A stretch of 64,000 nt of DNA from Penicillus capitatus (GCA_965649825.1 OZ287706.1:434001-498000); one strand, 5' to 3'; counted from the stretch's first letter, positions 740 through 48,046 are shown. The notes: a model not told the origin generated them from the letters alone. Made by a program: numbers and translations.

Positions 740-3153
740 TTATGTCTTGATTGGTGTCGTCGCTGTAGTCTTGGCCTTGTAGCACCATGTATCCTTCTTG
801 TCTTCTGAAGTCTTCCACCAACAGCAGCCGTGCTCTTCGCACGAGTTTTGGTTGGCGAAATATCCTACAGTGCAAGACAGATAGCGTCTTCAGTCAACGA
901 CGAACTGAAGCGGAGTGGCAGATGCTGACCGCATGGTTCACGGGCGGCCAGGGGAAAGACTTTGCAGGTCTCTGGGTCGAGCTCTGTATTCGGATAGAAG
1001 CAGACCACATCCGAGAATTCGGATCTGTTGTAACAGCAGCCCCTTCTCTGGCATTCTTCTTCCGTTAGACGGCTCGTGCCTGTCCAGATCAGAGTCGAAA
1101 CGTCACATCTTCGGAATACAGACGACCTCATACTCACCGCAGTTACTTCTATGAAGATGATTCGCGCAGTACTTGTAGTGCTTACTAATCACGTAAAAAC
1201 AGGCAACTCCGTTTGATGTATCCAGATCTCTGCTCCAGCAGCAGCCTTTTGCCGCGCACATTTCCGGCGTCTTCTCCTTTCCTAGGTGTTCGAACAACGA
1301 TCGATGAGTGACACTGAGTGGATCGTTTACCGCATTCGTTAATGTAAGAACCTGTCGGTGGAGAACAGCCAAACGAAGTACCCGACGGATGGAGTGTCTC
1401 TGGTAAGACAAATGGACTGGGCTGCGGCGGTGGCTTTGGTGAAGTAACCGGACTAGGCCGCGATGATGACTTAAACCTTCTTGCAAGCTCCGCCATCAAC
1501 GCATCCTGGCCCTCAGCCGTTTGCGGCGACCCAACTTGTTCCGGAAGCTTTGCCGTCAAGCCTTTCTCGCTCGCTGGCGTTTGCCGCGACTTGACCTTTT
1601 CCGCAAGCTTCGCCATCAACGCATCCTGGACTTCAGTCGTTTGTGGCGACCCAATCTTCTTCGCCAGATCCTTCGACGCTTTCTTGCGCTCAGGCGTTTG
1701 CGCCAACCCGGTTTTCTTCGCAGGCTCTGTCTTCGACGCCCTCTTGCGCTCAGGCGTTTGCGGTGGCTGGTACTTGGCCGGTGGCTCCTTTTTCAACACC
1801 ACCTTGATCTTGGGTGTTTTCTCTGGCTTTGCCTTGCACACCTGCGAATACCGTGCGGATGTGAGACATCAAGTGTTGCTCTCGACACAGAATATTCATC
1901 AAGAGCAAATGAATGAAACCAGTTTGCAGATACAACAGCAAGCACTGCATGCGTCGAGAGTACCTCGAGAAATTTTTTGCAGACGGACAGGTCGGGCGGA
2001 GGTAGAGACGGCTTTTCATCTGGGGGCGTCTTGCATTTGCTCCGTTGAACTTTGCCTGCCATCACTTTCATCATCCAGTTCCTGTAGTAGGAAACGCTGG
2101 AGTAAGCAGAACAGGGAGGATCGCCAGATCCACCGCGATTTTCGTTGACATGATCGAACGACAGGACGCCGACCACCAGATCCTCAGACGGATATCCCTT
2201 GTCCAACTCGCAGGGCCAGTCGACCAACGTAAGAGGACTTCCGTCCAGACCTGAACAACAAGACCATCAGCATGGATCCACGCGAATCTCCCATTGGGCT
2301 GCTGGACGCACTCGCCCGTGTGCTTTTGCTATCTTCGCAGAAGCAGATCCAGCTGTCCATCGGGACACTTTTGGGTGGCTTCCGGCATCGATTATGTTTC
2401 TCCCGGTGGACACGCATGTAGCTTTGACCGCTGCACTTTGTCACGCCTTTTTTGAGGCCCCACCCAGGAGTCACCATCTTCGTCTCGTCGTCGTAGACCA
2501 TTCCCTCTCGAAACAGTCTTGGCAGTTCCAGGGGCGCCTGCTTATCGAGCTTGAGCATGGCGATGTCCGATCCCAGTTCGATTTTATGCGTCCAATCTTT
2601 GTGCAGGTATGCCTCTTCGACATGGAATGTCTACAGCACGCTTGCAGTCGGCAAGCCGAGGGCGGAATTGCGAGAACTGCGCCTCACCTTTTCTTCAGAG
2701 ATCGTGTTGATATCGTCGATGCCGCAGTAAATGACCGGATAGCAACCGACCGAGTTCTTCACCATTGGGTCGATGCAGTGTGCCGCCGTCACGACCCAGC
2801 GTCTGCCGACGAGCGTGGCGGTGCACGAATGCTTCCGGCTTCCGGCCATCCGAAGACTGCACAGGTAAGGGAATCTGCCTGGATAGCCCTCCATTTTGTA
2901 GCACATCGCATTCGCATCTTCTCCATCGCCACCGTCCGTCAGGGACAAGGCCTCTCTGACATGGTGACGGACGAGCGAGGTGCACGCGCTGCGTCCTCCG
3001 AGGTCTGGACAGCAGCGAACCCTACAGTCGACCGGAGGTCCTGTCGACAACGACGTCACCTGGGTGGGCGAACGACGGACTCGGCGCAGACAGCGAAAAG
3101 CACAGCAGAAGCGCTGCGAACCCCGAAACCGTTTTGGCCAAACGCAAAGGCAT
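740..3153 (-). CDS. Secreted trypsin-like serine protease homologue (catalytic Ser replaced) fused to a Lys/Pro-rich repeat linker and three trefoil (P-type) domains; multi-exon
   Basis: Signal-peptide-like MPLRLAKTVSGFAALLLCFSLSAP starts at 3153. Trypsin motifs GRFPYLCSLR, VVTAAHC (His) and SDIAMLKL (Asp) are present. After intron 2251-2311 the Ser195 region reads STRASLDGSPL...LVVGVLSF. An in-frame GT-AG splice (KFLE|VCKAK) joins the linker. Three C-C-C-GCC-C trefoil patterns follow (ECGKEKTPEMCAAKGCCW..ACFY; NCGTSRLTEEECQRRGCCY..VCFY; PCGYFANQNSCEEHGCCW..WCY), with TAA at 740-742. The junction of the first exon is uncertain. Confidence 0.75.
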
Positions 3154-4879: not shown

Positions 4880-7790
4880 CTGTCAGAGCGGTCGGCGCGT
4901 GGACGTTGTGTCAACCGCTGGGGGAGTCCTAACGGAAGGTCGATAACGGTTGCAGTCCTGCGGACCGGACAGGCTGTCCGCTTCCTGACATGACAGCGGT
5001 CCGTGGGCGCCGAAGGTATTTAACCGACTGTACGCGCTATGTAAGTAGTCTTGGATTTGACTCCTTACAGTTCCTCCGCCTTTGCTCATGCGTTTGCGCG
5101 CCGCGTGCGCGCAAGTGTCGGACGATTCCCCGTCATCCCCACCAATCGCCATTCCGTTTCTGTCCATGCCTAACACCAGTAGTGTTTGCGGGTAGGTTTT
5201 AATGGCCGAATGACAGCTTCCATTCACTGCAAACACTGCGGTTTCTATCGCTTGAGGCCACTGATTCTAAGAGCCGTTCAGAATTAGTCTGACTCTTTTT
5301 TGCAACGTTTGGATTGTTCTCTCAGCGATGGCGTTCCTCTGATCGTAGTAGCTTGGATACAATCTGATCTCGATTCCTCTGCCATCAACCCATTTCGTAA
5401 AGTATTGCTTTCTACTGAGCTGCATCATCGCCGGAGATTGTCAAAAGAAGACCGATTCGTTAGATCCACGACTGTCCAGCTCTTTTGTCACAACTCTTGC
5501 TGTAGTATCAAATGTTCTTTGAGTGGCCACAAATCTTTTGCACGGCATAAGCCCATTCGGGCCCTTCCCTTCAGGGCAGGGAGTAGTTACGGGTTGTCAC
5601 GACTGAGCTAGCCAAGACTTGTTTACCGCGATCACGATATAACTTCCATCAAAGGTCCTGCGAATTCGATATGTACGCTCTGACCCAGCTCCGTCATCAC
5701 TTCTTTATTTGGACTATCGCTTGCTTGTGGTGTTCTTGAACATGCGCAAGTTGGGCGTCTCTTCACGAGATTTTCAATCTGTTGTCTCACTCAGGGGTGT
5801 GTTCCCCATTCCATCTTGGTATTTTGATGTGTCGTTTCTGCTGGCCGATGTAACAGGTCGTAAAAATTCTCTTAAAATTGATACGGGCTCATCAGCTTCC
5901 TTGTCACAACTCCGAATCCTTGCCATAGCATTAATGAAGATATCTATGCAACTGGTGACCGTGGAAAGGCCCCGTAGTCAGACTCGAACGAGCATTGCGT
6001 ACTGAAAAAACGATGATCTGAGTGTTTATTGCTATCGTAAAAGGTCCTTTCCATGACTCTCGGAAAACTGAAGGCGATACTAGCCTCACGACTAAGACAT
6101 GAGTTCATGTCACGTAACTAGAATTTCCTTTCGCTTTGAAAAATATACAGTATCGTAATCGACTCTCTCTCTTTACTTAGTATACAAAAGCGAAGAATCT
6201 ATCTGTTCGGTCGGAAGGTTGCATATCCGAAAAGCTGCAAACAGTTCTTTCTAATCAGACGACCAAGGACATAACTTGGTCCGATGGAGAATCTCTTGTT
6301 AAGTCAGAAAAACTCATTGAGAGGTGAAACTACAAGGGAAACCCGATGGATGTACTTTCTGACAGTATCAAAAACTCCCAAAACAGAATGCTAATCCCGT
6401 ACACATGTGACGGTCTGACTTATAGGATTCATTCTGGATCGTATGTTCGTCAACAGGTAGTTCTTCCACCGGACAGAACATCCCAGCAAGGGCATTATTG
6501 TTCTCAATGGCTCAGTTTCCAGAACAGTGCTTTTTTATACGCAGACTGTATCGAGTAAAAATCTCAAACAATGTTGTCAACGATTTGTGAGCCCTTCAGT
6601 GCTGTTTGGTAAGCACAAGACATATATATATAAATGGCGATTTTTACATGGGACCCGCACATGAAATACCCCATAAGCACAAGACATATCTCGTGTAATC
6701 TATAGCTACATGATTTCTCAAAAGACACGTCAGTCGTTGATGAAATAAACCATGAGACGCAATAAAACGTTGAGGAGGACGTTCCACATATATCTTGCCT
6801 CCAAAATCAAATCCAAAGAGTTCGTTCTTACATTTCTGGATCTGATGGCAACGAAAAAACCCGTCGGTGATATCCGAGACCGCAAGAATTTCAAGATTTT
6901 GGGATAGTTCGGAGAATCTCTCGTGCCAATACAAAATCTGACCAAGGAAGGACAAAGTGCGAGTTGCGTTGACGAAGGTCATGTAACCATCTGATCGCCT
7001 TTCGTCCTAACCTTGGAAGATAAAGAGATGGGTTTTTGTACGCGCTCTTGCCCTCAGGAATCTCGGGAAAGTGACTAATCTTGAGGATTTTACGAAAAGC
7101 TTCGTCTATCCATCCTTTCGGAGCCGAATGGTCTACCGTAAAATCCACGCCAGAATTGGTATGGAAGGTTACTTCATTCAAACATCTGTCACTGTAAAAG
7201 CTAAGTTTTTTCGTGGCTTTTGGTGGTCACTCTTAATTTGGTTTCGAATGAAGATACTAGATTTGTAGGGTCTCCAAAGATCGAACATGAAGGAGGAAGG
7301 TTCGGGCTGCAATTACCGCAATTCGAGAAAAACAACGAAAGAAACACACAAATCTCTCCTGAAGATGATGAAAAATGTGAGAGGGGTGGATTTCCCTCGC
7401 ATGGCAAGAGTTGACAACGAAAAAAAACCTTTCCTTGAATCAACCAAGATAGCAAAATCGTTGGGTATTCCGTAGTCACCAGAAAGCATGATCTTCCTGC
7501 AGGCAAATGCACATCGTGCTTTCTCTACTCTTTCGAGCGACCGATTTTCCTCACAAAGCCATCTTTAGGTAAGGTAAATCGTGAGTAAAAACTGTGCCGA
7601 TCGTGCCGCATATCGAACGACCTTTCATGGAATCATCTAAACAGAAACCTTTCGAAGGGATTTTATTCTCTCGCAGACAACACAAAACCGAAAGTCGGCC
7701 GTCCAGTTTTTCGTTGATGAAAACGGGAAAAAACTCGAATCGCACTGCTAGATTCAAAAATCCAATATCGATCGAGAAACAGCTTCTATA
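4880..7790 (-). mobile_element. Degraded Ty3/Gypsy pol remnant (RT, RNase H, integrase), copy A
   Basis: The minus strand gives interrupted integrase-core text (IEFAGPL; GIEIRLYPSYYDQRNAIAERTIQTLQKR; WPQAIETAVFAVNGSCHSAIKTYP) and RT-like text. There are many stops and frameshifts. A near-identical second copy lies at 13697-14412 plus 17510-19480. Confidence 0.75.
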
Positions 7791-9718
7791 TGAGTGTCGC
7801 GTCGTTGGTGAACAAGCACACGCATTAGCGGAAGACTTTAAAACAGAATGACGTAAACAACGCAATTGTCCCCCTTTTATAGTGTTAGGGTTTTCATGTG
7901 ACATGTAGTAGGTTCTGATGTGACTTCCCTTATACAGTCGGGATGCCTTCATTGTGCTCATTTAGTCTGACAGCTTCATTGTTAACTCATGTACATTGAC
8001 TGCTCAACAATGTAGACAAGTTCCAAGACTTCTTTCTAAGAAAGGACAAGAGTAAACTTTGACTCTCTAAATGTGACAAACGTGTTCTCGACGCTCATCC
8101 AGCGGAACGCCGGCCTTGTGTTGACAGATCGCAATCGATGTAGCCTGTTGAACGGACATATGACTCGCCATGTCTGTTTTCTCAGATGACGAGTTCCATA
8201 GAAGAAAGAGAGTGCTGCACTTATGTTCGTGGGAGAACTGATAGACGTCGTGTGAATCGTTCTTATTGTGAGCAGAAACGCCCATAGGATGCCTCCGCAT
8301 ACTTCTATCATGTTAACGACACCAACGACGCCATTCCTCCAAAACACGATTCGAGAATGTGGTATTCTGAGCACTCCGCATCTTCAAGCTTAACAGAGGG
8401 GAACTGATACAGAATCCTCATACACACATTGCCATCCAGTAAATCTGCGACATTTGGAAGAAGCGCATAAAAACAAGGCGGGGTCCTCTGTGAGCTATTG
8501 AGGATGACGGTGTTTTGGCGACGACACGCGATTGACTTCTCTTTCCTTCACAAGGGTGGCGGATAGCTTGAAAGGCATGGAGTCATCGCATGTGGCCAAG
8601 GTTCTAATTCCGGCTGCCCGGGATTTCTTCGTCGTACAGGAGAGAAAGCCGTTTTGACGTGCACGCACCGAACGTATCTCTATACCGGTCTTCAGCCACC
8701 AGAATTGTGCGTCTCTCCGGTGTCTCGCTCTGCTCAACGGCAGCTGTCGTCATGTCGCCGATTCTGATTTTGATGTTGCTCACCGCTCACGCAGCCTTCG
8801 GCGTCGAACCGAACATTAAAGAAGATAATCGACACTGCAAGCCTTGCGGTAAAACTTGCTTCACTTCCGCCCTCATTCCATGTTGCGATTAGCATGTCCC
8901 TACATCACTGAGGTGCTTTGTATCCGCATCGGCTGTGTTTGGAAACCCTCGAAAGATCCAGATGTTCATTCTTGCTGCAGACCTGGAAAGCAGTTGAAAG
9001 GAAGCACTTCGTTTGGCGACGGTGAGATGGACTCCATCAACGTTGCTCAAGCTTGTCAGACTTGATGGAAGGATTCTCATCATCCGGTCGGCAGATGTCT
9101 AGCGAGATCTTTTCGTTTATTGACTGTCGGGAAGCGAGAAGCTTTGCTTCTTTAGCCGTATCAAACAAAAACCAATTCCACATACATTTTCTCCAGTGCC
9201 AGGATTTCCAATGTCATGCAGCGAGTCTATTCATCGATCGAAGACGTGGAAATTGCCAGTCGTTAATCCTTAAGCTGTTATCTCTGTCCAGCTCTGTTTG
9301 TGTTCAGATGGACCAATGCGTCTAAGAAATCGACGGATTCCATGTTATTATGTTGTGTTACGTATCTTTAATTTAATCATTTGCAACCGGAGACAGACCC
9401 TGACCTCATGCGATCGAACGGTAACGCTCTGCTTCATTGTCTAATGATGGAATGATCTCGAAAAGGAACCTGTAGCGTCGTTGAGAAGCAGACATCATTA
9501 AACAATAGAACATGTTCATTCCGAAACGATGGAGTATGTGCAGACCACAGAAAAAGATAATGCAGAGGACTGAATCGCCGATGAGTAAATACTTGCCACG
9601 CTTCTCAGGCTGTTCTTGAAGGACGTTGATTTTCATCTTCATGCAGCTGCTGTCTATGACTCATAGCGTTGTCAGATTCGGAAATCCAATATCGATCGAG
9701 AAACAGCTTCTATATGAG
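7750..9718. repeat. 45 bp direct repeats (7750-7794, 9674-9718) flanking a 1.9 kb insert that is absent from the duplicate copy
   Basis: AGATTC(AA/GG)AAATCCAATATCGATCGAGAAACAGCTTCTATATGAG occurs on both sides, but only once (about 19440) in copy B. Confidence 0.85.
8752..9065 (+). CDS. Small secreted Cys-rich protein with a degenerate trefoil-like domain
   Basis: MSPILILMLLTAHAAFG signal peptide. A phase-1 intron follows TGC-G, as in the other trefoil genes. The spliced text is HCKPCACPYITEVLCIRIGCVWKPSKDPDVHSCC. Confidence 0.45.
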
Positions 9719-12014
9719 ATGTCAGTGGCAATCCGCGACAATGCAGCGCCTAAATAACAAGCATCAGAAAACGCCAAGAACAGACAGCGACCACACTTTC
9801 GACACACTCAATCTTCACCTGGCCTAAGGCTATCTCGACAGAAGATAATGATCTTGCGGTTTTCACCACTTTCCTGAATATGATCTACAGTCTAGATGGT
9901 GCCTCGGGGTAGGATCTACGGTCCAGCAGGCCCCTCGTGATTCCTAGCCTTGATCCATGTCGCGGCACCACGGACGATATAGATAGATCCATAGTATGGT
10001 GGGCAGATCGGCTAGCCATCTGGGCAGTGCAGCACAGCCATCTCTTTGGATCTGGAAGCAGCCCTCATGCTGACAACGCGCAGCGACGCGTTCGACGTAT
10101 GGATCGGCGAACGGATCGAAACTGCGAAAGTCGACGCCTGCCATTTTCAGATCCAAATAGGGACTGTCTGCCGGACTTGCATGCAAGTGAAGAACGGAGA
10201 GGCGCGCGGGAGCGACGGCGAAGGACTCGCCGCCGGAATCCCTCCGTGTCGCGCTCCGCTCTGCGTTCGCCCATCCGCGTTCTCGCAACCCGGCGCCGTC
10301 GACCTGTCTTCGAACCGCCGAACGGGTCCCGCCGGAGAAAACGCGAACGAGCTTCCTCGGCCGCTCGAGGCTGACGTCCGAAGGAGGACGCGTAAAACGA
10401 GACCGGTGCAGCGTGATGCTTCGAGCCATGCGGTTTTGGAATCCGCATGCACCAGCCGACTTTGTGTTGCAGGCTGTACGACGCATCGTCGAGAGCTGCG
10501 CCGACACGAGGCGCGCAGGGCACGTGGTCGTCGCGTCGCACAGGACCTCGGCTCTCGGTCGTGAAGCGAATAGGTCGGCGCGGAGACCCGACAACGCCAC
10601 GGCGAGCAGGCGAACCGCGACGGCGCCGTCTGGATGAGATCGGAAGACAAGCTTCCGTCGTCTTCCGGTCCAGCGGTCCGGGAACAGCTGGAGTCTCCTT
10701 CCGAATGCGCCGCCCGAGGCAGTCATCTATGCATCGAAGCCTCGGAGTTCGGTGCAGGGGCAGACGCGGAAGCTCGAAGAAGGCGGCGGGTACATCCGCT
10801 GTTCAGATCGCCTGCACGAAGGTCAGCTCTTGCGTCTCTCGGTCTCCCTTTCGACGTCGTCGCAGATCTCTTTCTTGCCGGCGAGTCTGAATGCGCCGTC
10901 CATCTCGACGGTTCCGCCGCTGGTCGGTCCTGGCCAGGCGAGCACCGAGTTGCGTGGATGCATGGGACAGACAAGCCTCCCATGGCGAGATCTGGCCAGC
11001 TCACCTTCCGAACGCACGGGACTGGGTTTCACGTCCATCGCAGCGGTGACTGCGTTGCGATGAGAGGAAGGTGGGATCCCCATTCTTGCATCGATGCCCA
11101 AGGAGAGTGAGATCTTCTCGCTGCGTGCGCCGCCGCAGCCGATGTTATCTCACGACGATGGACCGAGGAGCCATCTTGTTCCTCGCCGACTGGCGTCGTC
11201 CAAAGCTCCGAGCCTCTGGCCGCGCTCATCGCAGACATGTCGTGGTCACTTCACGCCGTGCAACCGACCGCGCATGGATAACGGCAGTGCCGAGGTCTGT
11301 CTTCCGCGGCGGCGATCGGATGGCCGGCAGAGTGAGACCAGACAGATCGCATGTCGCGGCAGTGAGCAATCGACCGATCCGTGACCGTCGGGCAAAGGGA
11401 CGTCTCATTCCACAGGACCCCGGGCCTCGAGAAGCAACTCAAGGCACTGAGGTCGTCACGCCGCTTCAACAAGGGAGGGACAAGCGATGGCGGCAAGCAC
11501 CCGATGCTGTCATCGCCACGACAGAGTTCGCGGGCAATGGTTGCCGCGGCAAAGCTGCTGATGCCTGTCTGTGTCGCAGGGAATCGCCCTCGACTGCGTA
11601 TGCATGACCGGCTACCCACTCTCGAACGACAGACACAAGAGCTTCCCCGAGTTTCGTCTTTCTTGTGACGGCACGTCAGACGAGAGATTTGCTGCAACTC
11701 TCGGTCAATGGACAGGTAGACATCCGTGTGTCTGTTCGACCTACATCTGAAAAATGGGAACTGGATCTGGCGAACCACATCAGGGGAACTGTGTTGCTCT
11801 TTCACTGACTGAGACTATGCCTTTCCTTTCGAGGACATGGATTACGCAGCAGGCCAGTGCTCTCCGAAGAAACGTCGCCGCCGCCATGTTTTGCCATGAG
11901 CCCTGACGGTTGGCACAAGTTCCTCCGCCTACAATTTCTGCTCCGAATATAGAGGACGCGAATAGTTTCAACGCTGGCGTGGCACCAACGCATCAAAGCC
12001 TGCCAGTCGAGAAC

Positions 12015-12021
12015 TATAAAA
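12015..12021 (+). promoter_or_regulatory. TATA box of the two-trefoil gene (duplicate at 28591-28597)
   Basis: TATAAAA lies about 75 nt upstream of the ATG and is conserved in both copies. Confidence 0.45.
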
Positions 12022-12093
12022 ACAGGTCCGCTGCGAATCCGAGCATCATTCGCTCTGTTTCGTCTCCCCGTTCGACAGCCGTTTGTTGATCCG

Positions 12094-12880
12094 ATGCGTT
12101 TGGTTCTCTTCTTTGCGCTGTTTGCTGCTCATGCAGCCCTGACGGCAGCTCAAAACACCTGCGTCCCTAAAGGGCATCTCAACGACTGCGGTATGCACTT
12201 TAGCCACGACTGTTTTCTCATCGTGCGAGATTTCTAGGATATGTGGGTATCGACAGAAATGAGTGCTTGAGTAAGTGCTGCTGTTGGCATGAATTTCCTG
12301 AAGGCTCAGGAAAGCCTTGGTGCTTCCACCGTAACGGCGGATACAAATATTGCGACAACTCACTCTTCAGAAGTGATTGCGGTGAGTTTTCGATCTTTTT
12401 CCGTGGAGAATGTAACGCTTTGACTTTGTTGTGGTAGGTACTATTAGCACCACACAAAAGGAATGCGAATCTTATGGCTGTTGCTGGGACCGCAATGATC
12501 CCTACCCTGCCTGCTATTACAAGAATTCGCCAAAACCGCCGCTTACTCGAGAAGACGTGTTTGGCGGTAAGTATTTTTACCTCACCTTCGAAGAACGTGT
12601 CGGTCGCCCTTTCGGACGGCCGCGGTTAAACGTTACGTACAGCTGTGGTCTAGGAGAAGTTCGAGGCTATGGCTGTCGCAATGAAGTCACGCGACGCCAT
12701 CGCGCTCGAAGACGCAAAGCCTATTTTATTTCCACTTCCTGTTTCAGTCTTTGTTTTTTCTTACGAGCGACTCTTCGCACGAGAGTCGCGCAGAAGACGG
12801 GAGCTAGGTCAGTGTCGACCATTTCTCAGTCTTCGAAGATTTTTTTCCCTTGTCAAATTGCCAAACACCCCAAACGATGA
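12094..12880 (+). CDS. Small secreted protein with two trefoil domains (TFF2-like architecture), copy A
   Basis: Spliced MRLVLFFALFAAHAALTAAQNTCVPKGHLNDCG|YVGIDRNECLSKCCCWHEFPEGSGKPWCFHRNGGYKYCDNSLFRSDCG|TISTTQKECESYGCCWDRNDPYPACYYK, with canonical GT-AG introns. The 3' end is uncertain. Confidence 0.8.
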
Positions 12881-13696
12881 GTACAAATTATAAGATTGTC
12901 CATCCAGCCATCATTCCGATCCCTTGAGAGGATAGATGTGTATGGCTCTTTAATCTCTTCTTGCAGCTCACTCTAATGTCGTTGACGAATCTCGCAGCTT
13001 GTTTGTATGACGCGAAGCCGCGGAAAGTCCAACGTGGGAATTGACAGGCCGAGTTAGAAACTCTTTAACTAAGCATCTCCGTTAAGATACTTAAGATATA
13101 GTGGTTCTCATCGGACAGGTATCGCGCTCTAGTCAAACAAATAAACGCTCACGCGAACCATCTTACAACCAGAACCAGAGTTCGTAACATGGTCAATTAA
13201 CCCCCATATGTAATGCTGTTGTGTCATAGGCCCACGAACACACGTTCGCTTTGCCAATACGAGAGAACCAACTTTTCCGGCTCTTGTTTGAAAATGAAAA
13301 CAAGCAAAAAAAGAGATGGGAAGGCCACTGGCCATCCCCGAACAATGATGTAGACGAAATAATCTAGCAGTAACTGAGAAAGAAAGAAAGAAACCTCACT
13401 GTGGATAAAACTTTCGAAGTTGAGATCAGTGTGCAGATGTCTGTTGGACTTCCCCTTCTCTCGAGATCCGCCATGGTGTTTGTGACTATCTTCTTCGTAT
13501 AGTGTATGGTCCATTTCGTTTAGATGAGAGCTTCTCCAAAGATCTCGACAACTAGAGTGGATCCTCCCGCAGAATTTGATCTCCTGTCTTGAATGATCGA
13601 GAGGGAAAGGGATATTTGTCGGAACCTGTCCGCTTCCTACTTTTTCAAAGAGGCATGTGTTCTTGAACAGCCTTTTCCCGCAGTCCTATTATTTGC

Positions 13697-14412
13697 TCCC
13701 CACTAATCACCATTCCGTTTCTGTCCGTGCCTAACACCAGTAGTGTTTGCGGGTAAGTTTCAATGGCCGAATGACAGCTTCCATTCACTGCAAACACTGC
13801 GGTTTCTATCGCTTGAGGCCACTGATTCTAAGAGCTGTTCAGAATTAGTCTGACCCTTTTTTGCAACGTTTGGATTGTTCTCTCACCGATGGCGTTCCTC
13901 TGATCGTAGTAGCTTGGATACAATCTGATCTCAATTCCTCTGCCATCAACCCATTTCGTAAAGTATTGCTTTCTACTGAGCTGCATCATCGCCGGAGATT
14001 GTCAAAAGAAGACCGATTCGTTAAATCCACCACTGTCCAGATCTTTTGTCACAACTCTTGCTGTAGTATCAAATGCTCTTTGAGTGGCCACAAATCTTTT
14101 GCACGGCATAAGCGCATTCAGGCCCTTCTCTGTAAAGCAGGGAGTAGTTACGGGTTGTCACGACTGAGCTAGCCGAGACTTGTTTACCGCGATCACGATA
14201 TAACTTCTATCAAAGGTCCTGCGAATTCGATATGTACGCTCTGACCCAGCTCCGTCATCACTTCTTTATTTGGACCATCGCTTGCTTGTGGTGTTCTTGA
14301 ACATGCGCAAGTTGGGCGCCTCCTCACGAAATTTTCAATCTGTTGTCTCACTCAGGGGTGTGTTCCCCATTCCATCTTGATGTTTTGATGTGTCGTTTCT
14401 GCTGGTCGATGT
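13697..14412 (-). mobile_element. Ty3/Gypsy integrase remnant, copy B left part
   Basis: Near-identical to 5140-5850 and ends at the 3.1 kb insertion. Confidence 0.75.
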
Positions 14413-15429
14413 CGATGTCCAAAATGAACATGTTCTGTCCTCTTTCTGTCGCTTTAGCATGGAATCCGCGTCGGCATAAACATGGTGTTCGATTGTCTTC
14501 TTCCTTTCGGTGTTGCTAAGACATTTGCTCCTCGATTGATAGTGCCGGGCACAAACTCATAACGCGCATTCGTTTCATTGTGCAATATGTGTCCAAACAG
14601 CGACACATCTGACGTCATCTTCAATCCAATTTCCCGAAAGTCTCTATTCTATCACTGACCTATTATCCGAGCGAACTTTTGTGTCAAAACATCCCCGGAT
14701 ACCTCGAGTCTTCCGCACTGTCAGGAAAAAAACCCCTTGAGTTCTCCAAGGTAGCTTGACGTTATCTCGAGCATGGTGTGTGATCCGAGATTCAACAGTT
14801 TCCATGACTTACCTTTTGCATCTTCACCGTATAACATGCAGGCCGTGTAAAAATCCGTCCGATTAGTGTACAGCATGAATCTTGAGAATACTTCCCATAC
14901 GAGATTTACTACTTCCCAGCATTCGAGCGCTTGTTCATGGAATAGAACACATCCTCGTCTCAATGATTCCATGCCGACCGATGAAAGAAATACCACGGTC
15001 AGGGTGCACAGGGAAGCACATGGGCGTATGCAAACGTCGCGTCGGACGGTGGGACCGCACGACAATCAACTGCCGCATGTCGCGTTGTCGGTGAACAACG
15101 GCTTAACGACGAAGGCTTATAACTTACAAAGACTGTTGAATCATTATAATCCGGATTATATACGCGTCGAACGTACGCAAACGTCCTATCAACGCGTCTC
15201 CGTTCGTCAGCTGCACGAAGGTGGACAGGTATCCACTGACACCGCATTAGATGCGTCCGACACATTGTAACTATTACAGTAATCGCGCGATTCATTCGTC
15301 CGTCTTGTTCTCCGCAGCGTCGAGCTCCGCGTCATGGACGGTCGACTGACGTGGGCCCAGATATCCATTGAGTTCGAGTATCTAAGTGGACTAATGAACA
15401 CATGCGTCTTGGTAGTCGAAGTGAGCAGA

Positions 15430-16400
15430 ACCTTCATTCCCGAAATACACTTCTTCGGCATGCTGTATATGATCTTTCTCTGTCCGACCTTCAGTCCGTC
15501 TATCATAGCAGGAATCGATCTCTGGATGTCTGCTTTGTAGAACGAGACGAGCTCCTTGTTGACAAATCGGTCTACCTTATCTTCGATTCACTATAATCCA
15601 TAAACTTCTTCTCCGTCATTGGAGCGATCCACTTCTTTCTGTCTTCCACGCGTTTCTTCGAGAATACCATATCGATGGCTTCATCTGCTTCTCCTCCTAG
15701 AAGGATATACACAATGTAGAGTGAGGTTTTGTAGAACTGAGATCTTCTGACCCTCGTATGTGAACTCCTTCCTATGAAACGAAATCGCCTGGAAGCACTC
15801 TAGAGCTTTTCTCCGTGAGAACGCCCAGAGTCCTCTGAAGTATTTGACGTTCCGCTCGTTTTGCCTAAACTCAGCTCCTCTTTCCATCGCCCATACTCAT
15901 TGACGGCGAAGAAAGCTTTTACATCGCCCTTGTGTTTTACATGTGGTAGCAACATGGCCCTTTACCGGAGGTGAGATGGAAGGATTACTTTAACGATTGG
16001 AGTGACGAAGACCTCTATAAATTTGGCAGTTATAGCAGCAATAGATGACAGCGACGAAGGAAGTTAATGGCTAAGCCCTTAATGTGGGCACCATTGGCAT
16101 TCTGATCACACGTCAGAAGTATGCGACCGTATCGCAGACTCGTCAGATCTCCATGCCTCTCGAGACAGATGAGACAGACAACGATATACATTATCAATCT
16201 CGTTGGTCATCAGGTCTTCAGTGTCCGTGGGCTGAGGTGACAAGCCCTGTCTTCCTGTCATTGTAAAACACGAAGGCGTTACCACCTACTCGATCCCGAG
16301 GACAGCCATGAGGTCCCTGTCGGCCTAATGAGCACTAAAGATCATTACAATTAAGGGATTTGGCGCTTCGCTGTGGGGAATTATTCGGATTTAAGATTTC
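15430..16400 (-). pseudogene. TOP2: DNA topoisomerase II (type IIA) fragment: Toprim and start of the WHD region
   Basis: Recognisable motifs in order: SLRYGRILLTCDQNANGAHIKGL, FVTPIVK, NVKYFRGL, EAIDMVFSKKRVEDRKKW, VNKELVSFYKADIQRSIPAMIDGLKVGQRKII. It contains a TAG plus frameshift, a degenerate DxD motif and a GT-AG intron. The catalytic Tyr region is absent. Confidence 0.85.
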
Positions 16401-16439
16401 GCACCACCTTCGTTTCGTTCGTTTCTCCGACGCTGGCGC

Positions 16440-17250
16440 GAGTCCCACAATCCCTGATCTCGTGGTTGCTCTCGGGATCGTCCTCGGATGTCACATTCTT
16501 CATCTACCCCCTGTCGAGTTCACCTGAATCAGGAAAGGAAGACTGAACTTCTCACTTTAGTCCGTAGACCCAGAAGGCCTGACGACCAATGACATTAAGA
16601 ATGCCCATGTGGGTAAACTGCATCCCAGAGTCGCCCTTGGCCAATATGAGGATGCACTCGGCGGATTTCTCTCTTCCTGCCCAGTCGGCATCTAGGTGGC
16701 AGTTGTTCGGTGCCAGCAAAAAGTGAAAACCAGGAGAGGCGAATGACAACTTACGGTAAGTCTTCTTTCCGAAGGTCTCTCTCCTCTGGGGATCTCAACG
16801 ACGAGACAGTGGATCTAACGCCAACTGGCACCAGAAACCAAATCATCGCAATTACCGGTCACGGCATTCATGATACCTTATTTTTATGCAGTATACATAT
16901 ACGCCGTAACCAGAATTCGCGATTATGGCAAGCACGACGACCGGATGGATGATGACGACACGTGTTGTGTGTCATCCTCAATCGAACTTCATGAGCCATT
17001 TATATCCATGACTGCTAGAATATCCGAAAGCAACCTTTTTCTGCAAATGTTCATGAATTCTCGCCGTCTTCCACATTGCTAATAAGATCCCCTTGCGCTC
17101 TCCGAGATAGCTTGATGACATTCTTGGTAAAGTGTGAGAACTGATGTCCACTAGCTTCAATGTTCTATCTCATTTGGCATCTTCTTGACAGTCACATTCT
17201 ATTGTCCAAATATTCTGATGGCCATCATCTTCGCTGGCAAGCAACAGACT
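16440..17250 (-). pseudogene. TOP2: Second, more decayed topoisomerase II fragment (transducer to Toprim start)
   Basis: HLDADWAGREKSAECILILAKGDSG..GILNVIGRQAFWVYGLK resembles the Top2 motif KLDDANxAG...CTLILTEGDSA...GRxxxGVFPLRGK. The upstream part is only weakly recognisable. Confidence 0.55.
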
Positions 17251-20238: not shown

Positions 20239-20247
20239 TGGGCCCAC

Positions 20248-30619: not shown

Positions 30620-32350
30620 ATCCGCTGCCATCCGGCTGCCTCTTTGACTCAGTGGCGCCTCTCTTCGTGTTCGCGCACGAACACGGCCTCAAATTCCGTT
30701 CGCTGAAACGCGACAGTGTCCGTAAATTCTGCTCTAATTCCGGACGCCATTGGTGGACGCAGCCTCGTGGAGAGGTCGAGCGGTTAGCAGATGACGGTGT
30801 ATGAGTCACCTTTCTCTGCCCACCGTCAACTCGGTTTTGAAGCCGTCTTCTAAATCGAAAAGGACCATCCCCGTTGCACCACTTCAGCGACCTCGAGCGA
30901 ACGACCCGGGTTAAGAGAGAGTCCTGTCTGGTAGATCTGGCGAGAATGTCGCGCCTTTTCCTCTTCGTTCTCTTCCTCGCCACGTCGCGCGCTCAGTCGA
31001 CGGAGAGACCTGTAGGTAAGAGATGTCGTCCTCGAGTTCGCCTAGATGCACGGTCGTGGCACCATCTGGGCTTCTTTGACGGTGCATGTGAGAGAATTCT
31101 GTGCAGATCCGGAAGAAGATAGACTTCACTGGACATGCTCTTTCTTCTACATTCCTTGGCCTGTCTGCGGAGAGGATCGTGTTACCTACCTGAACCGCTG
31201 TCTTGCGGAGTTGCATGACACCACAGTCGCTTGTTACAAACCCTGTCTATTTTGCCCCGAGAGTGCGGCTTAACGCAAATGATGCTCAGATCTCGACATC
31301 CAGATCTCTCTCCTTCTAGGTCCTGGGGGACCAATTCCTTTCCCAACCCCTTTCAAATCTCAACCAACACCCGTCGCCACGGCCGCGCAATCAGGAGTGG
31401 ATAGTTCCGGATTCACTTGCGACACGAGCGGATCATCATATCTCAACGATTGCGGTAAGCGCACTTCCTAGAATTGGCATGTGTTGAATGTGTGGAGTTT
31501 CAGGGAGAGGTCCCATTACTGAACCGGAATGCTTGGCCAGAGACTGCTGCTATCATGAATTCGGAGAAGGATCTGAGGAACCTTGGTGTTTCTTCAAGAA
31601 CTCAGGATACGATTACTGTGCCAATCAACTTTACAGAAGCGACTGCGGTGCGCTACGGTCCCGTTGATGTGACAGATCAGATGAGATGCTTTCGACTGTG
31701 GTGTGACAGGCGAGCTCAGTACGACGCAACAGGAGTGCGAGGATCGCGGTTGCTGCTGGGACGAATACATTCCTCTGCCTTCCTGCTTCTTCCAGAACTC
31801 GGACATTGACCAATCCCGTTGTCAAATTCCGGAACCCGATCGCCAGCCCTGCGGTAAACGCCCTGTTTTGTGATCCAGTCATTGACGGAGAGCTTCGTTA
31901 CTCCTGCTGCGCCTTAGGTGACGGCAGCAGCCAAGAAGCGTGCGAAGGATCTGGCTGCTGTTGGTGGCCTCTTGAAGAAGGATCCCAAGAACCGTGGTGC
32001 TACACACCCACGTCCAGTTCGTCGATGAAAAACGTTCTTCGCGGCGACCTGTCAGGTTTGGCATCAAGAATCGAACAATGGACCGCTCTTTCGAGCGGCG
32101 GCGGTCTAAACTTTGGGTACAGCTTTTGTCTAGGGGAAGCTCGAAGGGCTGTGGTGGTCGCAATGAAGTCACGGGCCGCCATCCCGCTCAAAGACGCAAA
32201 GCCTTCTTCCACTTTCTGTCTCAGTTTCATCTTTTCTTACAATCGACTCTTCTCACGGGAGTCGCGCAGAAAACGGGAACGAGATCCGTATCGGTCGTTC
32301 CCAGTTTTCGAGAATGTCTTTTCCTTTTGCCAACTTGTCAAACACTCCAA
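30620..32350. repeat. Left arm of an inverted duplication (partner about 46345-48290)
   Basis: Reverse-complement near-identity across the trefoil exons, introns and upstream region. Confidence 0.9.
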
Positions 32351-32369
32351 ACTTCGACAAAGATTCTAG
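30946..32369 (+). CDS. Secreted Kazal plus three-trefoil fusion protein
   Basis: MSRLFLFVLFLATSRAQ signal peptide. Kazal motif CSFFYIPWPVCGEDRVTYLNRC. A predicted phase-1 intron (gtgcgg...ttctag) skips the stop at 31271-31273 and leads into PGGPIPFP...TCDTSGSSYLNDCG and three trefoils. The 3' end is uncertain. Confidence 0.7.
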
Positions 32370-46329: not shown

Positions 46330-48046
46330 TCAAAAGGCAAGCAGTTCAGAATCTATTGTTTGACGATTTGGAGTGTTTGACAAGTTGGCAAAAGAAAAAG
46401 ACATTCTCGAAAACTGGGAACGACCGATACGGATCTCGTTCCCGTTTTCTGCGCGACTCCGTGAGAAGAGTCGATTGTAAGAAAAGATGAAACTGAGACA
46501 GAAAGTGGAAGAAGGCTTTGCGTCTTTGAGGGCGATGGCGGCGCGCGACTTCATTGCGACCATTACAGCCCTTCGGGCTTCCCCTAGACAAAAGCTGTAC
46601 CCAAAGTTTAGACCGCCGCCGCTCGAAAGAGCGGTCCATTGTTAGATTCTTGATGCCAAACCTGACAGGTCGCCGCGATGAACGTTCTTCATCGACGAAC
46701 TGGACGTGGGTGTGTAGCACCACGGTTCTTGGGATCCTTCTTCAAGAGGCCACCAACAGCAGCCAGATCCTTCGCACGCTTCTTGGCTGCTGCCGTCACC
46801 TAAGGCGCAGCAGGAGTAACGAAGCTCTCCGTCAATGACTGGATCACAAAACAGGGTGTTTACCGCAGGGCTGGCGATCGGATATCGAGATTTGACAACG
46901 GGATTGGTCGATGTCCGAGTTCTTGAAGAAGCAGGAAGGCAGAGGAATGTATTCGTCCCAGCAGCAACCGCGATCCTCGCACTCCTGTTGCGTCGTACTG
47001 AGCTCGCCTGTCACACCACAGTCGAAAGCATCTCATCCGATCTGTCACATCAACAGGATCGAAGTGCACCGCAGTCGCTTCTGTAAAGTTGATTGGCACA
47101 GTAATCGTATCCTGAGTTCTTGAAGAAACACCAAGGTTCCTCAGATCCTTCTCCGAATTCATGATAGCAGCAGTCTCTGTCCAAGCATTCCGGTTCAGTA
47201 ATGGGACCTCTCCCTGAAACTCCACACATTCAACATATGCCAATTCTAGGAAGTGCGCTTACCGCAATCGTTGAGATATGATGATCCGCTTGTGTCGCAA
47301 GTGAATCCGGAACTATCCACTCCTGATTGCGCGGCCGTGGCGACGGGTGTGGATTCTGTGGCACCTAAAAGAAGAGATTTGGGCGTCATTCTTGCTTAGC
47401 CACATGTCTAGTATTACATGGACATGGACCATCGCAAGCAATTGGTATTTCTTCATATTCGGCCGTGCACTTGTTGTACGTTTTCCCATCTTCTCCGCAA
47501 ACCGGCACATAAGTTATCGGACACGAAGGTCCTGTCCCTGTTTTCGGCAACAAGTGCCCCGGAGGTTCTATCTTTCGCATTGGCTTGTACACTTTTGGAA
47601 GTGCACTCTTTTGCGGGTAAGGTTCGGCGCATGTTGGACATGGACGCCAGAAAGGTACCCAGATTGTCTCGGGTGTTGGAGGCACATCACCTGAAACGCA
47701 AGATCTTCTCTCTAGGATTTAACTTCACAGCTTACATGGACAGCTGCCTTTGCAAGCGATCGTCGCACAATTCATAGTCGCGAAGCAGCTATTGTAGTAC
47801 GTTTGACCATCCGAACCACAGACTGGTGCGCGTAGCCAAGGGAAGATGCATGACCAATCATTCGTGCATCCATTCTTGTCAACACCTGCACAGAATTCTC
47901 TCACATGCACCGTCAAAGAAGCCCAGATGATGTCACGACCGCACATCTAGGCGAACTCGAGGACGACGTCTCTTACCTACAGATCTCCCCGTCGACTGAG
48001 CGCGTGATGCGGCGAGGAAGAGAACGAAGAGAAGAAGGCGTGACAT
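46330..48046 (-). CDS. Secreted two-Kazal plus three-trefoil fusion protein (inverted paralogue of the gene at 30946)
   Basis: MSRLLLFVLFLAASRAQ signal peptide. Kazal motifs APVCGSDGQTYYNSC and CPITYVPVCGEDGKTYNKC, joined by phase-1 introns to trefoil exons nearly identical to 31370-32050. The 3' end is uncertain. Confidence 0.75.

What the first reader, a model, noticed from the sequence alone, without database searches (positions are those of the whole stretch)
740..48046. A local family of six secreted trefoil genes forming a possible protease-decoy/inhibitor/lectin surface system
Seen: about 14 trefoil or trefoil-like domains in six signal-peptide genes (740-3153, 8752, 12094, 28670, 30946, 46330-48046). 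They occur alone or fused to a dead protease or to Kazal inhibitors, and sit among retroelement debris and duplications. Inference: an expanding extracellular defence or mucilage/wound-plug module set, convergent with animal mucosal TFF/SPINK biology and diversified by duplication and exon shuffling.
Basis: inference. Interest (0 to 1): 0.72.

Follow-up and report, generated by a model that had tools for sequence, protein, structure and literature searches.

The report
Secreted trefoil-domain gene cluster, green alga
A 47-kb stretch of an uncultured green alga's genome holds six duplicated genes for secreted proteins built from trefoil (P-type) domains, the sugar-binding module of animal mucus peptides, with some copies fused to Kazal protease inhibitors or to a serine protease; the family is real and under selection, but its function has not been tested.

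Summary
The observation largely holds. Hand-spliced gene models give 13 complete six-cysteine trefoil domains in five genes (A, C, D, E, F), all above Pfam's PF00088 threshold. A sixth gene (B) has one degenerate, sub-threshold copy. A motif scan finds 13 sites against 0.04 expected in shuffles. All six genes start with a signal-peptide-like exon.

F carries two Kazal domains and E one borderline Kazal domain. A carries an S1 protease domain whose His/Asp/Ser triad is present, so "dead protease" is not supported.

C/D are tandem segmental duplicates and E/F are inverted duplicates. An intact LTR retrotransposon sits inside the duplication.

The contig is from a green alga in a metagenome. The closest relatives are three adjacent, uncharacterised Caulerpa lentillifera gene models. 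A sister genome keeps the Kazal-trefoil gene next to cytochrome c1, with dN/dS of 0.11-0.19 on the trefoil exons.

Every inter-domain intron is phase 1, but it lies inside the domain, just after Cys2-Gly. Animal trefoil domains are encoded one per exon.

The most likely role is as multivalent glycan-binding modules in the extracellular matrix that also tether inhibitors or a protease. This is inferred, not shown. It is a new variant of a known kind and of moderate interest.

The parts
740..3153 (-). Gene A. Eight exons: 3153-3060, 2953-2688, 2630-2265, 2206-1964, 1841-1331, 1281-1138, 1079-930, 864-740. Order of modules: signal peptide, divergent S1 (trypsin-like) protease domain, Lys/Pro-rich repeat linker, three trefoil domains. 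Stop codon at 740-742.
   Evidence: Hand splicing with GT-AG introns of 49-122 nt. Pfam Trypsin 72.9 bits and Trefoil 57.3 bits in 3 stretches. The triad aligns to trypsin. The intron 3 choice (2264-2207) is the least certain.
1964..2953 (-). Protease domain of gene A (exons 2-4). It has TAAHC, DIAMLKL and GDSRGS, and Ser at position 189. It lacks the IVGG N-terminus, lacks Cys191, and has LSFD in place of SWG.
773..1370 (-). Trefoil domains A1 (1190-1370), A2 (988-1174) and A3 (773-972). Each is split by a phase-1 intron after Cys2-Gly.
   Evidence: Window HMM hits and six-Cys regex.
8752..9021 (+). Gene B. Signal-peptide exon 8752-8848, then an exon from 8893 with one degenerate trefoil-like domain (C-IRIG-CVW). 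Probably a relic. It lies in a 1.9-kb stretch (7798-9670) that is absent from the duplicated copy.
   Evidence: Pfam Trefoil 17.6 bits, below the cut-off of 21. Own HMM gives only 7 bits. Self-BLAST.
12094..12566 (+). Gene C. Exons 12094-12190, 12238-12381 and 12438-12566 or beyond. Signal peptide plus two trefoil domains (12154-12335 and 12345-12526). The 3' end is unresolved.
28670..29154 (+). Gene D, the tandem duplicate of C. Exons 28670-28766, 28816-28959 and 29013-29154 or beyond. Signal peptide plus two trefoil domains (28730-28913 and 28923-29101). The 3' end is unresolved.
   Evidence: dN/dS against C is 0.28.
30946..32070 (+). Gene E. Exons 30946-31015, 31095-31262 (one borderline Kazal-like domain), 31320-31454, 31504-31647, 31710-31853 and 31918 onward. 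Three trefoil domains (31412-31601, 31611-31798, 31817-32009). The stop codon used by F is GAA here (32068-32070), so the ORF runs on into the 3' element.
46642..48046 (-). Gene F, the inverted duplicate of E. Exons 48046-47977, 47897-47736 (Kazal 1), 47690-47418 (linker plus Kazal 2), 47364-47263, 47213-47070, 47007-46864 and 46799-46642. Three trefoil domains (47116-47305, 46919-47106, 46708-46900).
   Evidence: A syntenic ortholog exists in the sister loci L004 and L005, with conserved splice sites and dN/dS of 0.25.
5136..29536 (.). Tandem segmental duplication. Copy 1 is 5136-12953. Copy 2 is 13697-29536, interrupted by a 3.1-kb insertion (14412-17510) and by the LTR retrotransposon.
   Evidence: Self-BLAST. 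Divergence is 3.4% in the 500 bp upstream of C/D and about 10-22% across the genes and downstream.
19935..26750 (-). Intact LTR retrotransposon. Identical 304-bp LTRs (19935-20238 and 26447-26750) with TG..CA ends and a CTGT target-site duplication. ORFs carry zinc knuckle and aspartic protease, and RT and integrase. It is inserted in the GC-rich repeat upstream of gene D.
30716..32367 (+). One arm of the inverted duplication that carries E. The partner arm is 48276-46348 and carries F. Identity is 92-97% and the arms are 14 kb apart, with Kelch and BRWD (WD40 plus bromodomain) genes between them.
29187..29620 (+). Shared non-coding 3' element. Copies lie at 12605-13037 (C), 29187-29620 (D), 32084-32513 (E) and 46633-46363 on the minus strand (F). 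Its nature is unexplained.

Best explanation
Shown: the region encodes a lineage-specific, recently duplicated family of secreted, disulfide-rich proteins of a green alga. All members share a core of two or three P-type trefoil domains (T1 - 'NGGY.YC' linker - T2 - 'N.D...C' linker - T3). Different N-terminal modules have been added upstream of that core on phase-1 exons: nothing in C and D, one or two Kazal domains in E and F, and an S1 protease plus a Lys/Pro-rich linker in A.

Inferred mechanism: the trefoil core is a multivalent carbohydrate-binding (lectin-like) unit. It binds or cross-links glycans of the alga's own wall, mucilage or glycoprotein matrix, as TFF peptides do with mucins. 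In the fusion proteins it anchors protease inhibitors, and one probably active chymotrypsin-like protease, to that matrix. C and D would then be plain cross-linkers, E and F matrix-bound inhibitors, and A a matrix-bound protease. A giant gene about 0.4 Mb away on the same contig is a candidate mucin-like partner. It encodes a signal peptide, at least 11 trefoils, EKPEPSPHEKTKVE repeats, about 550 residues of Ser/Thr/Glu/Lys-rich low complexity, and a terminal trefoil.
For: Domain identity:
- Pfam PF00088 is above threshold in A, C, D, E and F.
- The profile of the 13 domains hits TFF2 at 8e-15, and also TFF3, TFF1, GAA, MGAM and SI, with all six Cys aligned.
- Foldseek's top hits for a low-confidence model are TFF2, TFF3 and TFF1.

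Secretion: all six genes have a signal-peptide-like first exon.

Functional constraint:
- dN/dS of F against its syntenic ortholog in a sister genome is 0.25 overall, 0.11-0.19 on the trefoil exons and 0.41 on Kazal 1. Splice sites are conserved and the trefoil exons have no indels.
- dN/dS is 0.28 for C-D and 0.42 for E-F, and every Cys is retained.

Shared core: same-position domains are the most alike across genes. D1-F1 are 62% identical, D2-F2 61%, A2-D2 47% and A3-F3 44%.

Lectin inference:
- The two sugar-contacting side chains of TFF3, Asp20 before Cys2 and Trp47 before Cys6 (PMC7221086), are both kept in domain 1 of C, D, E and F.
- Among the best multi-trefoil proteins in 1.84 billion representatives, the recurring partners are glycan-active enzymes. 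144 of the top 150 were scanned with Pfam and gave GH15 x6, alpha-amylase, GH71, LPMO and CBM26. GH31 and a glyoxal oxidase come from the source names of the top ten.

The mucin-like trefoil gene on the same contig.

Protease-inhibitor partners occur elsewhere too, as TIL and WAP domains.
Against: - No expression, secretion or binding data exist. The organism is known only from a metagenome contig.
- Only 4 of the 13 domains keep both TFF sugar-contact residues. None of gene A's domains keeps both (E/A, N/V and P/W at the two positions), so sugar binding by most domains, if any, must use other contacts.
- The ligand of TFFs (GlcNAc-alpha-1,4-Gal on mucins) is not known from green algae.
- The structural model is of low confidence (pLDDT 55).
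- The protease domain is very divergent. It has no IVGG, no Cys191-Cys220 pair, Gly196->Arg and SWG->SFD, and its only database relative scores 5e-6. It may be inactive or have an unusual activity even with an intact triad.
- The gene 3' ends are unresolved, so a membrane or GPI anchor cannot be excluded.
Confidence: 0.5

Rival explanations
1. Outward-facing defence set. The trefoil domains recognise glycans of bacteria, fungi, epiphytes or grazers rather than the alga's own matrix. The Kazal fusions neutralise foreign serine proteases, as oomycete EPI1/EPI10 or apicomplexan Kazal inhibitors do. Rapid duplication reflects an arms race.
For: - Turnover is recent and lineage-specific. The E/F duplication is younger than the species split. 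Kazal 2 is present in F but absent from the sister ortholog. The signal-peptide and Kazal exons evolve faster than the trefoil exons (dN/dS 1.16 and 0.41 against 0.11-0.19).
- The predicted P1 residue of Kazal 1, by analogy with canonical Kazal numbering, is Phe. It is conserved between the two genomes (CIFPW and CVFFW), which suits chymotrypsin- or subtilisin-type targets.
Against: - The trefoil domains themselves are under clear purifying selection, not diversifying selection.
- No binding or infection data exist.
- This reading overlaps with the main explanation and cannot be separated from it by sequence alone.
Confidence: 0.2
2. Wound-plug or cytoplasm-aggregation factors of a siphonous (coenocytic) green alga, analogous in function to the Bryopsis lectins (bryohealin/BPL). 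They would be released on injury to agglutinate organelles and seal the cell.
For: - The closest homologues are in Caulerpa lentillifera (Bryopsidales), as three adjacent gene models.
- The proteins are multivalent and lectin-like.
- Lectin-driven aggregation is established for Bryopsis (bioRxiv 10.1101/2023.11.22.568388).
Against: - The organism's class is not established. Cytochrome c1 is 74-78% identical to many green lineages and is no closer to Bryopsis than to the others.
- The Bryopsis genome paper does not mention trefoil or Kazal proteins.
- There is no wounding data.
Confidence: 0.1
3. Cell-cell adhesion or gamete/zygote coat proteins, or peptide signals. Trefoil modules also occur in animal zona pellucida proteins, and TFF peptides have receptor-mediated effects.
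For: The proteins are secreted, small and disulfide-rich (the mature trefoil cores of C and D are about 90 residues), evolve fast and are duplicated. The mosaic use of trefoil modules is documented in PMC7350206.
Against: - The window has no ZP domain and no receptor-like partner apart from an unrelated LRR membrane protein 10 kb away.
- Nothing in the sequences is specific to this reading.
Confidence: 0.08
4. Decaying duplicates in a transposon-rich region with no present function.
For: - Gene B is degenerate and sub-threshold.
- E has lost F's stop codon and has only a borderline Kazal domain.
- The C-terminal tails are not conserved.
- A retrotransposon and indels lie within the duplicated block.
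Against: - The reading frames of A, C, D, E and F are intact across 3-8 exons, and all 78 trefoil cysteines are kept.
- GT-AG sites are conserved.
- dN/dS is 0.11-0.42.
- The ortholog in a sister genome is syntenic.
Confidence: 0.05

Closest known systems
[quoted passage not shown]
   Same: - Homologous P-type domain with the same six-Cys spacing and the signature R..CG..GI(T/S)...C...GCC(W/F)......PWC(F/Y). Per-domain identity is 28-46%.
- Small secreted proteins.
- C and D have two tandem domains, like TFF2.
- Phase-1 introns.
- The lectin contact pair Asp/Asn and Trp is kept in some domains.
   Different: - Found in a green alga, not an animal.
- Trp or Tyr instead of Phe after the Cys-Cys pair.
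- No seventh Cys for dimerisation.
- Introns lie inside each domain after Cys2-Gly, whereas animal TFF domains are one per 1-1 exon (PMC7350206).
- Up to three domains, with fusions to Kazal or protease modules.
- Ligand and function unknown.
Caulerpa lentillifera predicted proteins g6199.t1, g6200.t1 and g6201.t1 (EukProt EP00210)
   Same: - Nearest relatives: 45% identity to F over 142 residues and 44% to D.
- Signal peptide plus two or three trefoils, with the same inter-domain linkers (NGGY.YC).
- Consecutive gene numbers suggest a tandem cluster.
   Different: - No Kazal or protease fusion is seen in these models.
- g6200 and g6201 have lost Cys2 and Cys4 in domain 1, which in the standard trefoil connectivity is one disulfide.
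- They are automatic gene models without annotation or publication.
[quoted passage not shown]
   Same: Trefoil modules are used as shuffled phase 1-1 units next to Ser/Thr-rich repetitive regions (PMC7350206). The L001 gene on the same contig (at least 11 trefoils, repeats, an S/T/E/K-rich region and a terminal trefoil) has this layout.
   Different: - The window's six genes lack mucin-type regions. Gene A has only a Lys/Pro-rich linker.
- The algal low-complexity region is acidic, and whether it is glycosylated is unknown.
Trefoil modules attached to glycan-active enzymes (GH31 acid alpha-glucosidase, maltase-glucoamylase, sucrase-isomaltase; GH15 glucoamylases; chytrid glyoxal oxidase)
   Same: The same domain serves as an accessory module on secreted or lumenal carbohydrate-handling proteins.
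   Different: Here the partners are a protease and protease inhibitors, not glycosidases. Among 144 of the 150 best multi-trefoil representatives, none had Kazal and one had trypsin. That one has the opposite domain order and a canonical animal-type protease.
Kazal-type secreted inhibitors (animal SPINK; oomycete EPI1/EPI10; apicomplexan TgPI)
   Same: F's domains match PF00050 (30.3 bits) and have the PVCG-x-DG-x-TY-N-x-C core. They are secreted and multi-domain.
   Different: - Fused to a trefoil core.
- Cys spacing is atypical: 9 residues between Cys2 and Cys3 in Kazal 1, and extra C-terminal Cys.
- No inhibition data.

Membership tests
Trefoil / P-type domain (Pfam PF00088) | Profile match at or above the curated gathering score | tested here: met
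   A 57.3, C 53.1, D 60.0, E 71.9 and F 59.8 bits against a cut-off of 21. Gene B fails at 17.6 bits.
Trefoil / P-type domain (Pfam PF00088) | Six cysteines with the spacing C-x(8-11)-C-x(8-9)-C-x4-C-C-x(9-12)-C | tested here: met
   All 13 domains of A, C, D, E and F meet it. All six Cys align to TFF2. B does not meet it: CC->CV and only 2 residues between Cys1 and Cys2.
Trefoil / P-type domain (Pfam PF00088) | Fold: short helix plus two-stranded sheet, held by 1-5, 2-4 and 3-6 disulfides | tested here: inconclusive
   The AF2 model of D has pLDDT 54.9, but each domain shows one helix followed by two strands. Foldseek's best hits are 1pos (TFF2, E 8.8e-4), 6v1c (TFF3) and 6v1d (TFF1). Disulfide pairing was not tested.
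Trefoil / P-type domain (Pfam PF00088) | One domain per symmetric phase 1-1 exon (animal genes; PMC7350206) | tested here: not met
   The exons are phase 1-1, but each intron lies after Cys2-Gly. One exon therefore encodes three quarters of a domain, the linker, and the first quarter of the next domain. The same intron position is seen in the related proteins P0179 and P0001 as in-frame read-through.
TFF-type lectins (GlcNAc-alpha-1,4-Gal binding) | Asp/Asn immediately before Cys2 and Trp immediately before Cys6 (PMC7221086) | tested here: inconclusive
   Both residues are present in domain 1 of C, D, E and F, which is 4 of 13 domains. Domain 2 of those genes has Asp but no Trp. Domain 3 of E and F has Trp but Pro in place of Asp/Asn. 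Gene A: A1 has Glu/Ala, A2 Asn/Val and A3 Pro/Trp.
TFF-type lectins (GlcNAc-alpha-1,4-Gal binding) | Measured binding to the disaccharide or to mucins, and co-secretion with mucins | not testable with these tools
   Needs protein and glycan assays.
Kazal serine protease inhibitors (PF00050/PF07648) | Profile match above the gathering score and the C...PVCG.DG.TY.N.C core | tested here: met
   F scores 30.3 bits on PF00050 in two stretches against a cut-off of 21. Kazal 1 has PVCGSDGQTYYNSC and Kazal 2 has PVCGEDGKTYNKC. E is borderline: 21.2 bits on PF07648 against 22.8, and 16.9 on PF00050 against 21.
Kazal serine protease inhibitors (PF00050/PF07648) | Inhibition of a serine protease through the reactive-site loop | not testable with these tools
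   The P1 residue is inferred as Phe in Kazal 1 and Ile in Kazal 2, by position only.
S1 (chymotrypsin-fold) serine peptidases (PF00089) | Profile match above the gathering score | tested here: met
   72.9 bits against 20.6, covering model positions 6-220 of 220. PDB hits to kallikrein, factor XI and elastase at about 1e-11.
S1 (chymotrypsin-fold) serine peptidases (PF00089) | Catalytic triad His57, Asp102, Ser195 | tested here: met
   TAAHC, DIAML and GDS all align with bovine trypsin. This contradicts 'dead protease'. The Ser195 region depends on my choice of intron 3.
S1 (chymotrypsin-fold) serine peptidases (PF00089) | Canonical activation N-terminus (IVGG), GDSGGP motif, Cys191-Cys220 disulfide and the Ser214-Trp215-Gly216 substrate strand | tested here: not met
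   There is no IVGG. The motif reads GDSRGS. Cys191 is replaced by Pro. The substrate strand reads LSFD in place of SWG. Activity therefore remains open.

The most novel reading that the evidence does not exclude
A green alga has assembled, from the same ancient modules, a working counterpart of the animal mucus barrier. Multivalent trefoil lectins (C, D) would cross-link a giant trefoil-bearing, mucin-like glycoprotein (the L001 gene on the same contig). Kazal inhibitors (E, F) and a matched chymotrypsin-like protease (A) would be held in that gel by their own trefoil cores. The match is suggested by Ser189 in A's pocket and a predicted Phe at P1 of the inhibitor. This would be an independently built TFF-mucin-SPINK logic outside animals, possibly underlying mucilage or wound sealing in ulvophyte algae.
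Probability: 0.15. Interest if true: 0.7.

Novelty: new variant of a known kind. Interest (0 to 1): 0.4.

Why it matters
Trefoil (P-type) domains are discussed almost entirely as animal mucosal modules. This region shows a conserved, selected and actively duplicating family of secreted trefoil proteins in green algae. Its exon register differs from the animal one. Its fusions (Kazal x2 + trefoil x3; S1 protease + trefoil x3) did not appear among the best multi-trefoil proteins in a 1.84-billion-protein library.

If the domains bind glycans, they would add a lectin class to green-algal wall, mucilage or wound biology, where only a few lectin families are known. They would also give a non-animal system for asking what the ancestral trefoil function was. 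If they do not bind glycans, this is simply a lineage-specific family of small cysteine-rich secreted proteins.

Tried and rejected
- Word-indexed homology searches with F and with A returned almost nothing. F found only P0001, on the same contig. A found one ant protease at 5e-6. Distribution therefore had to come from the exhaustive profile search.
- The scan of JGI metagenome contigs failed. D exon 2 gave 434 pattern hits, and none was confirmed.
- The AF2 model of D was of low confidence (pLDDT 55), so I use it only as weak support.
- I tested whether the conserved region 3' of C, D, E and F is a final coding exon and rejected it. The four copies differ by 1-, 4- and 5-nt indels and no frame is shared. 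It has no Rfam or tRNA match, no terminal inverted repeats and only weak covariation.
- 'Dead protease' is rejected on the triad alignment.
- Whether E's single Kazal domain is a Kazal 1/Kazal 2 recombinant is unresolved. It aligns to both.
- A pseudogene reading is rejected for A and C-F and kept for B.
- The bacterial promoter/terminator scan is irrelevant for a eukaryote and found nothing.
- The 7.8 kb upstream of the window has no further trefoil genes.
- The window coordinates in the contig record computed from two loci disagree by about 6.8 kb. The window also differs from the stored locus L003 by about 0.07%. I did not pursue this.

Full report
**1. What is in the sequence**

A six-frame motif scan found 13 sites with the C-terminal trefoil signature C-x(3-5)-CC-[FYWH]-x(5-16)-C-[FYWH]. 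One hundred composition-preserving shuffles gave a mean of 0.04 and a maximum of 1. Each site is preceded, across a short GT-AG intron, by a C-x(8-11)-C-G segment.

I spliced six genes by hand.
- A runs 3153->740 on the minus strand in eight exons.
- B starts at 8752.
- C starts at 12094.
- D starts at 28670.
- E starts at 30946.
- F runs 48046->46642 on the minus strand in seven exons.

Pfam results:
- Trefoil (PF00088) is above its gathering score in A (3 domains), C (2), D (2), E (3) and F (3).
- B scores 17.6 bits against a cut-off of 21.
- A has a Trypsin domain at 72.9 bits.
- F has Kazal_1 at 30.3 bits in two stretches.
- E has a borderline Kazal match at 21.2 bits against 22.8.

An HMM built from the 13 domains finds exactly these in the window and only a 7-bit trace in B. 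The same profile hits porcine TFF2 (8e-15), TFF3, TFF1 and the GH31 trefoils in the PDB, with all six cysteines aligned. An AlphaFold model of D is of low confidence (pLDDT 55). It still shows a helix followed by two strands in each domain, and its best Foldseek matches are TFF2, TFF3 and TFF1.

All six N-termini have a hydrophobic core followed by a cleavage-like motif of small residues. I could not run a dedicated signal-peptide predictor.

**2. Corrections to the observation**

The protease in A is not demonstrably dead. TAAHC, DIAML and GDS align with His57, Asp102 and Ser195 of trypsin, and position 189 is Ser as in chymotrypsin.

The domain is nevertheless very divergent. It has no IVGG and no Cys191. 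It reads GDSRGS for GDSGGP and SFD for SWG. Its only database relative scores 5e-6. Activity is therefore open, and the Ser195 region depends on my weakest intron call.

Gene B looks like a relic. The retroelement is not debris. It is an intact LTR retrotransposon at 19935-26750 with identical 304-bp LTRs, TG..CA ends, a CTGT target duplication, and gag/protease and RT/integrase ORFs.

The 3' ends of C, D and E are unresolved. E has GAA where F has its TAA stop codon.

**3. Gene architecture**

Every intron that separates repeat units is phase 1 and 45-65 nt long. Each lies directly after Cys2-Gly, inside the domain. One 144-nt exon therefore encodes the last three quarters of one domain, the linker, and the first quarter of the next domain.

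The signal-peptide exons and both Kazal exons (162 and 273 nt) are also phase 1-1. Animal trefoil domains are described as single 1-1 exons (PMC7350206). The phase class is the same here, but the register differs.

Same-position domains are the most similar across genes: D1-F1 62%, D2-F2 61%, A2-D2 47% and A3-F3 44%. The linkers ('NGGY.YC', 'N.D...C') are shared. A T1-T2(-T3) core therefore predates the gene duplications, and the Kazal and protease modules were added upstream of it.

**4. Duplication history**

Self-BLAST shows a tandem segmental duplication, 5136-12953 against 13697-29536. The second copy is broken by a 3.1-kb insertion and by the LTR element. It also shows an inverted duplication, 30716-32367 against 48276-46348, at 92-97% identity.

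- C-D: dS 0.48, dN/dS 0.28.
- E-F: dS 0.085, dN/dS 0.42.
- The 500 bp upstream of C and D differ by only 3.4%, whereas the genes and downstream sequence differ by 10-22%. The GC-rich upstream repeat is therefore younger than the genes or has been homogenised.

**5. Organism and relatives**

Exact look-ups place the window on ENA metagenome contig ERZ25074695:ctg340479 (954 kb). Its cytochrome c1 is 74-78% identical to green-algal and streptophyte proteins, including Closterium, Myrmecia, Tetraselmis, Bryopsis and Chlorella. The PDB search ranks the plant proteins first. The host is a green alga of unresolved class.

The word-indexed search with F found only P0001, a gene about 0.4 Mb away on the same contig. 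Read in full, that gene has a signal peptide, at least 11 trefoils with the same intron position, EKPEPSPHEKTKVE repeats, about 550 residues of Ser/Thr/Glu/Lys-rich low complexity, and a terminal trefoil.

An exhaustive profile search of 1.84 billion representatives gave 1445 proteins at E<=1e-3 and 31 at E<=1e-30. The highest scorers are multi-trefoil proteins of cnidarians, a newt, tunicates and chytrid fungi (glyoxal oxidase, GH31).

By BLASTP the nearest to the window proteins are Caulerpa lentillifera g6199.t1, with three trefoils and 45% identity to F, and g6200/g6201 with two trefoils each. The consecutive gene numbers suggest a tandem cluster there as well.

I scanned 144 of the 150 best hits with Pfam.
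- The main partners were glycan-active enzymes: GH15 in six proteins, and alpha-amylase, GH71, LPMO and CBM26 in one or two each.
- None had a Kazal domain.
- One each had TIL, WAP and trypsin.
- The trypsin case has the opposite domain order and a canonical animal-type protease.

I found no paper linking trefoil domains to Caulerpa, Bryopsis or other green algae.

**6. Evidence that the genes are functional**

Two contigs from another sample (ERZ26696514; loci L004 and L005) are 80-87% identical to the window at the nucleotide level. They keep the gene order LRR - DnaJ - VHS/GAT - cytochrome c1 - [Kazal + three trefoils] - WD40.

The F ortholog there has the same exon structure and splice sites. 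It has Kazal 1, a Pro-rich linker without Kazal 2, and T1-T3.

dN/dS of F against L004:

| Segment | dN/dS |
|---|---|
| All segments | 0.25 |
| T1 | 0.19 |
| T2 | 0.11 |
| T3 | 0.13 |
| Kazal 1 | 0.41 |
| Signal peptide | 1.16 |

The trefoil exons have no indels, while the introns do. The E/F duplication (dS 0.085) is younger than this species split (dS 0.57).

**7. Likely mechanism**

Shown: this is a secreted-looking, selected, duplicating family built on a trefoil core.

Inferred: the core is a multivalent glycan-binding unit that cross-links, or docks onto, extracellular glycans, and carries inhibitor or protease modules with it. Four things support this.
- Lectin activity is established for TFFs, and its two contact side chains are known (Asp/Asn before Cys2 and Trp before Cys6; PMC7221086).
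- Both are retained in domain 1 of C, D, E and F.
- Across eukaryotes, trefoils repeatedly sit on carbohydrate-handling proteins.
- The same contig carries a mucin-like trefoil gene.

Against it, only 4 of the 13 domains keep both contact residues and none of A's does. The animal ligand is not known from algae, and nothing has been measured. Defence, wound-plug and adhesion readings remain open. A pseudogene reading is excluded for all genes except B.

**8. Verdict**

The finding is real and well delimited. Six genes lie within 47 kb, with no further trefoil domain in the 7.8 kb upstream or the 16 kb downstream.

The 'dead protease/decoy' idea is not. The functional story is untested.

The domain family is known, and multi-trefoil proteins are widespread. 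The algal family, its shifted exon register, and the Kazal-trefoil and protease-trefoil fusions are undescribed variants.

Noticed in passing
window 12605-13037, 29187-29620, 32084-32513, 46363-46633 (-): A non-coding element of about 280-430 bp lies just 3' of genes C, D, E and F. It is 76-94.5% identical between copies, although the C/D and E/F coding regions are too diverged for BLASTN to detect. Its indels are not multiples of three, and it contains a conserved 8-bp-stem hairpin. It is absent from the orthologous F locus of the sister genome and from L001. That suggests recent spread by gene conversion or a small mobile element rather than an old conserved UTR.
   Followed up: partly
L001 about 9630-13272 (same contig as the window, about 0.4 Mb away): A giant gene encoding a signal peptide, at least 11 trefoil domains (introns again after Cys2-Gly), EKPEPSPHEKTKVE tandem repeats, about 550 residues of acidic Ser/Thr/Glu/Lys-rich low complexity, and a final trefoil. 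The layout resembles the frog integumentary mucins.
   Followed up: partly
window 19935-26750: An intact LTR retrotransposon with 100% identical 304-bp LTRs and a CTGT target-site duplication, so the insertion is very recent. Its first ORF (1100 aa) has a long N-terminal part with a hydrophobic start and a (Q)QSPPSPPS repeat, ahead of the zinc knuckle and aspartic protease.
   Followed up: partly
window 9670-12090 and 19435-19934 + 26750-28665: A GC-rich (about 61%) 2.4-kb repeat lies directly upstream of genes C and D. The 500 bp next to the genes differ by only 3.4%, while the genes themselves differ by 10-22%. Its long ORFs have no Pfam match, and its nature is unknown.
   Followed up: partly
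L004 13042-14240 and L005 (sister genome, ENA ERZ26696514): The ortholog of gene F has Kazal 1 but no Kazal 2, with a Pro-rich linker in its place. The second Kazal domain was therefore gained in the window's lineage or lost in the sister lineage.
   Followed up: partly
window 50455-51273 (-): The cytochrome c1 ORF reads through a probable in-frame intron ([17 protein letters not shown], just before the CAACH haem motif). The prokaryote-style gene calls in the database contain such read-through segments.
   Followed up: no
window 1-13361 against L003 7803-21164: The window is 99.93% identical, not 100%, to the stored copy of the same contig, with a 1-base offset beginning between about 7343 and 7427. 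Window-to-record offsets derived from two loci disagree by about 6.8 kb.
   Followed up: no
window 1331-1841 (-): The linker of gene A contains two pairs of tandem repeats (QTPERK(R/K)ASK and GSPQT.E.QDALMA.LA). It is Lys/Pro-rich, with a PKPPPQPSP stretch before the first trefoil.
   Followed up: no
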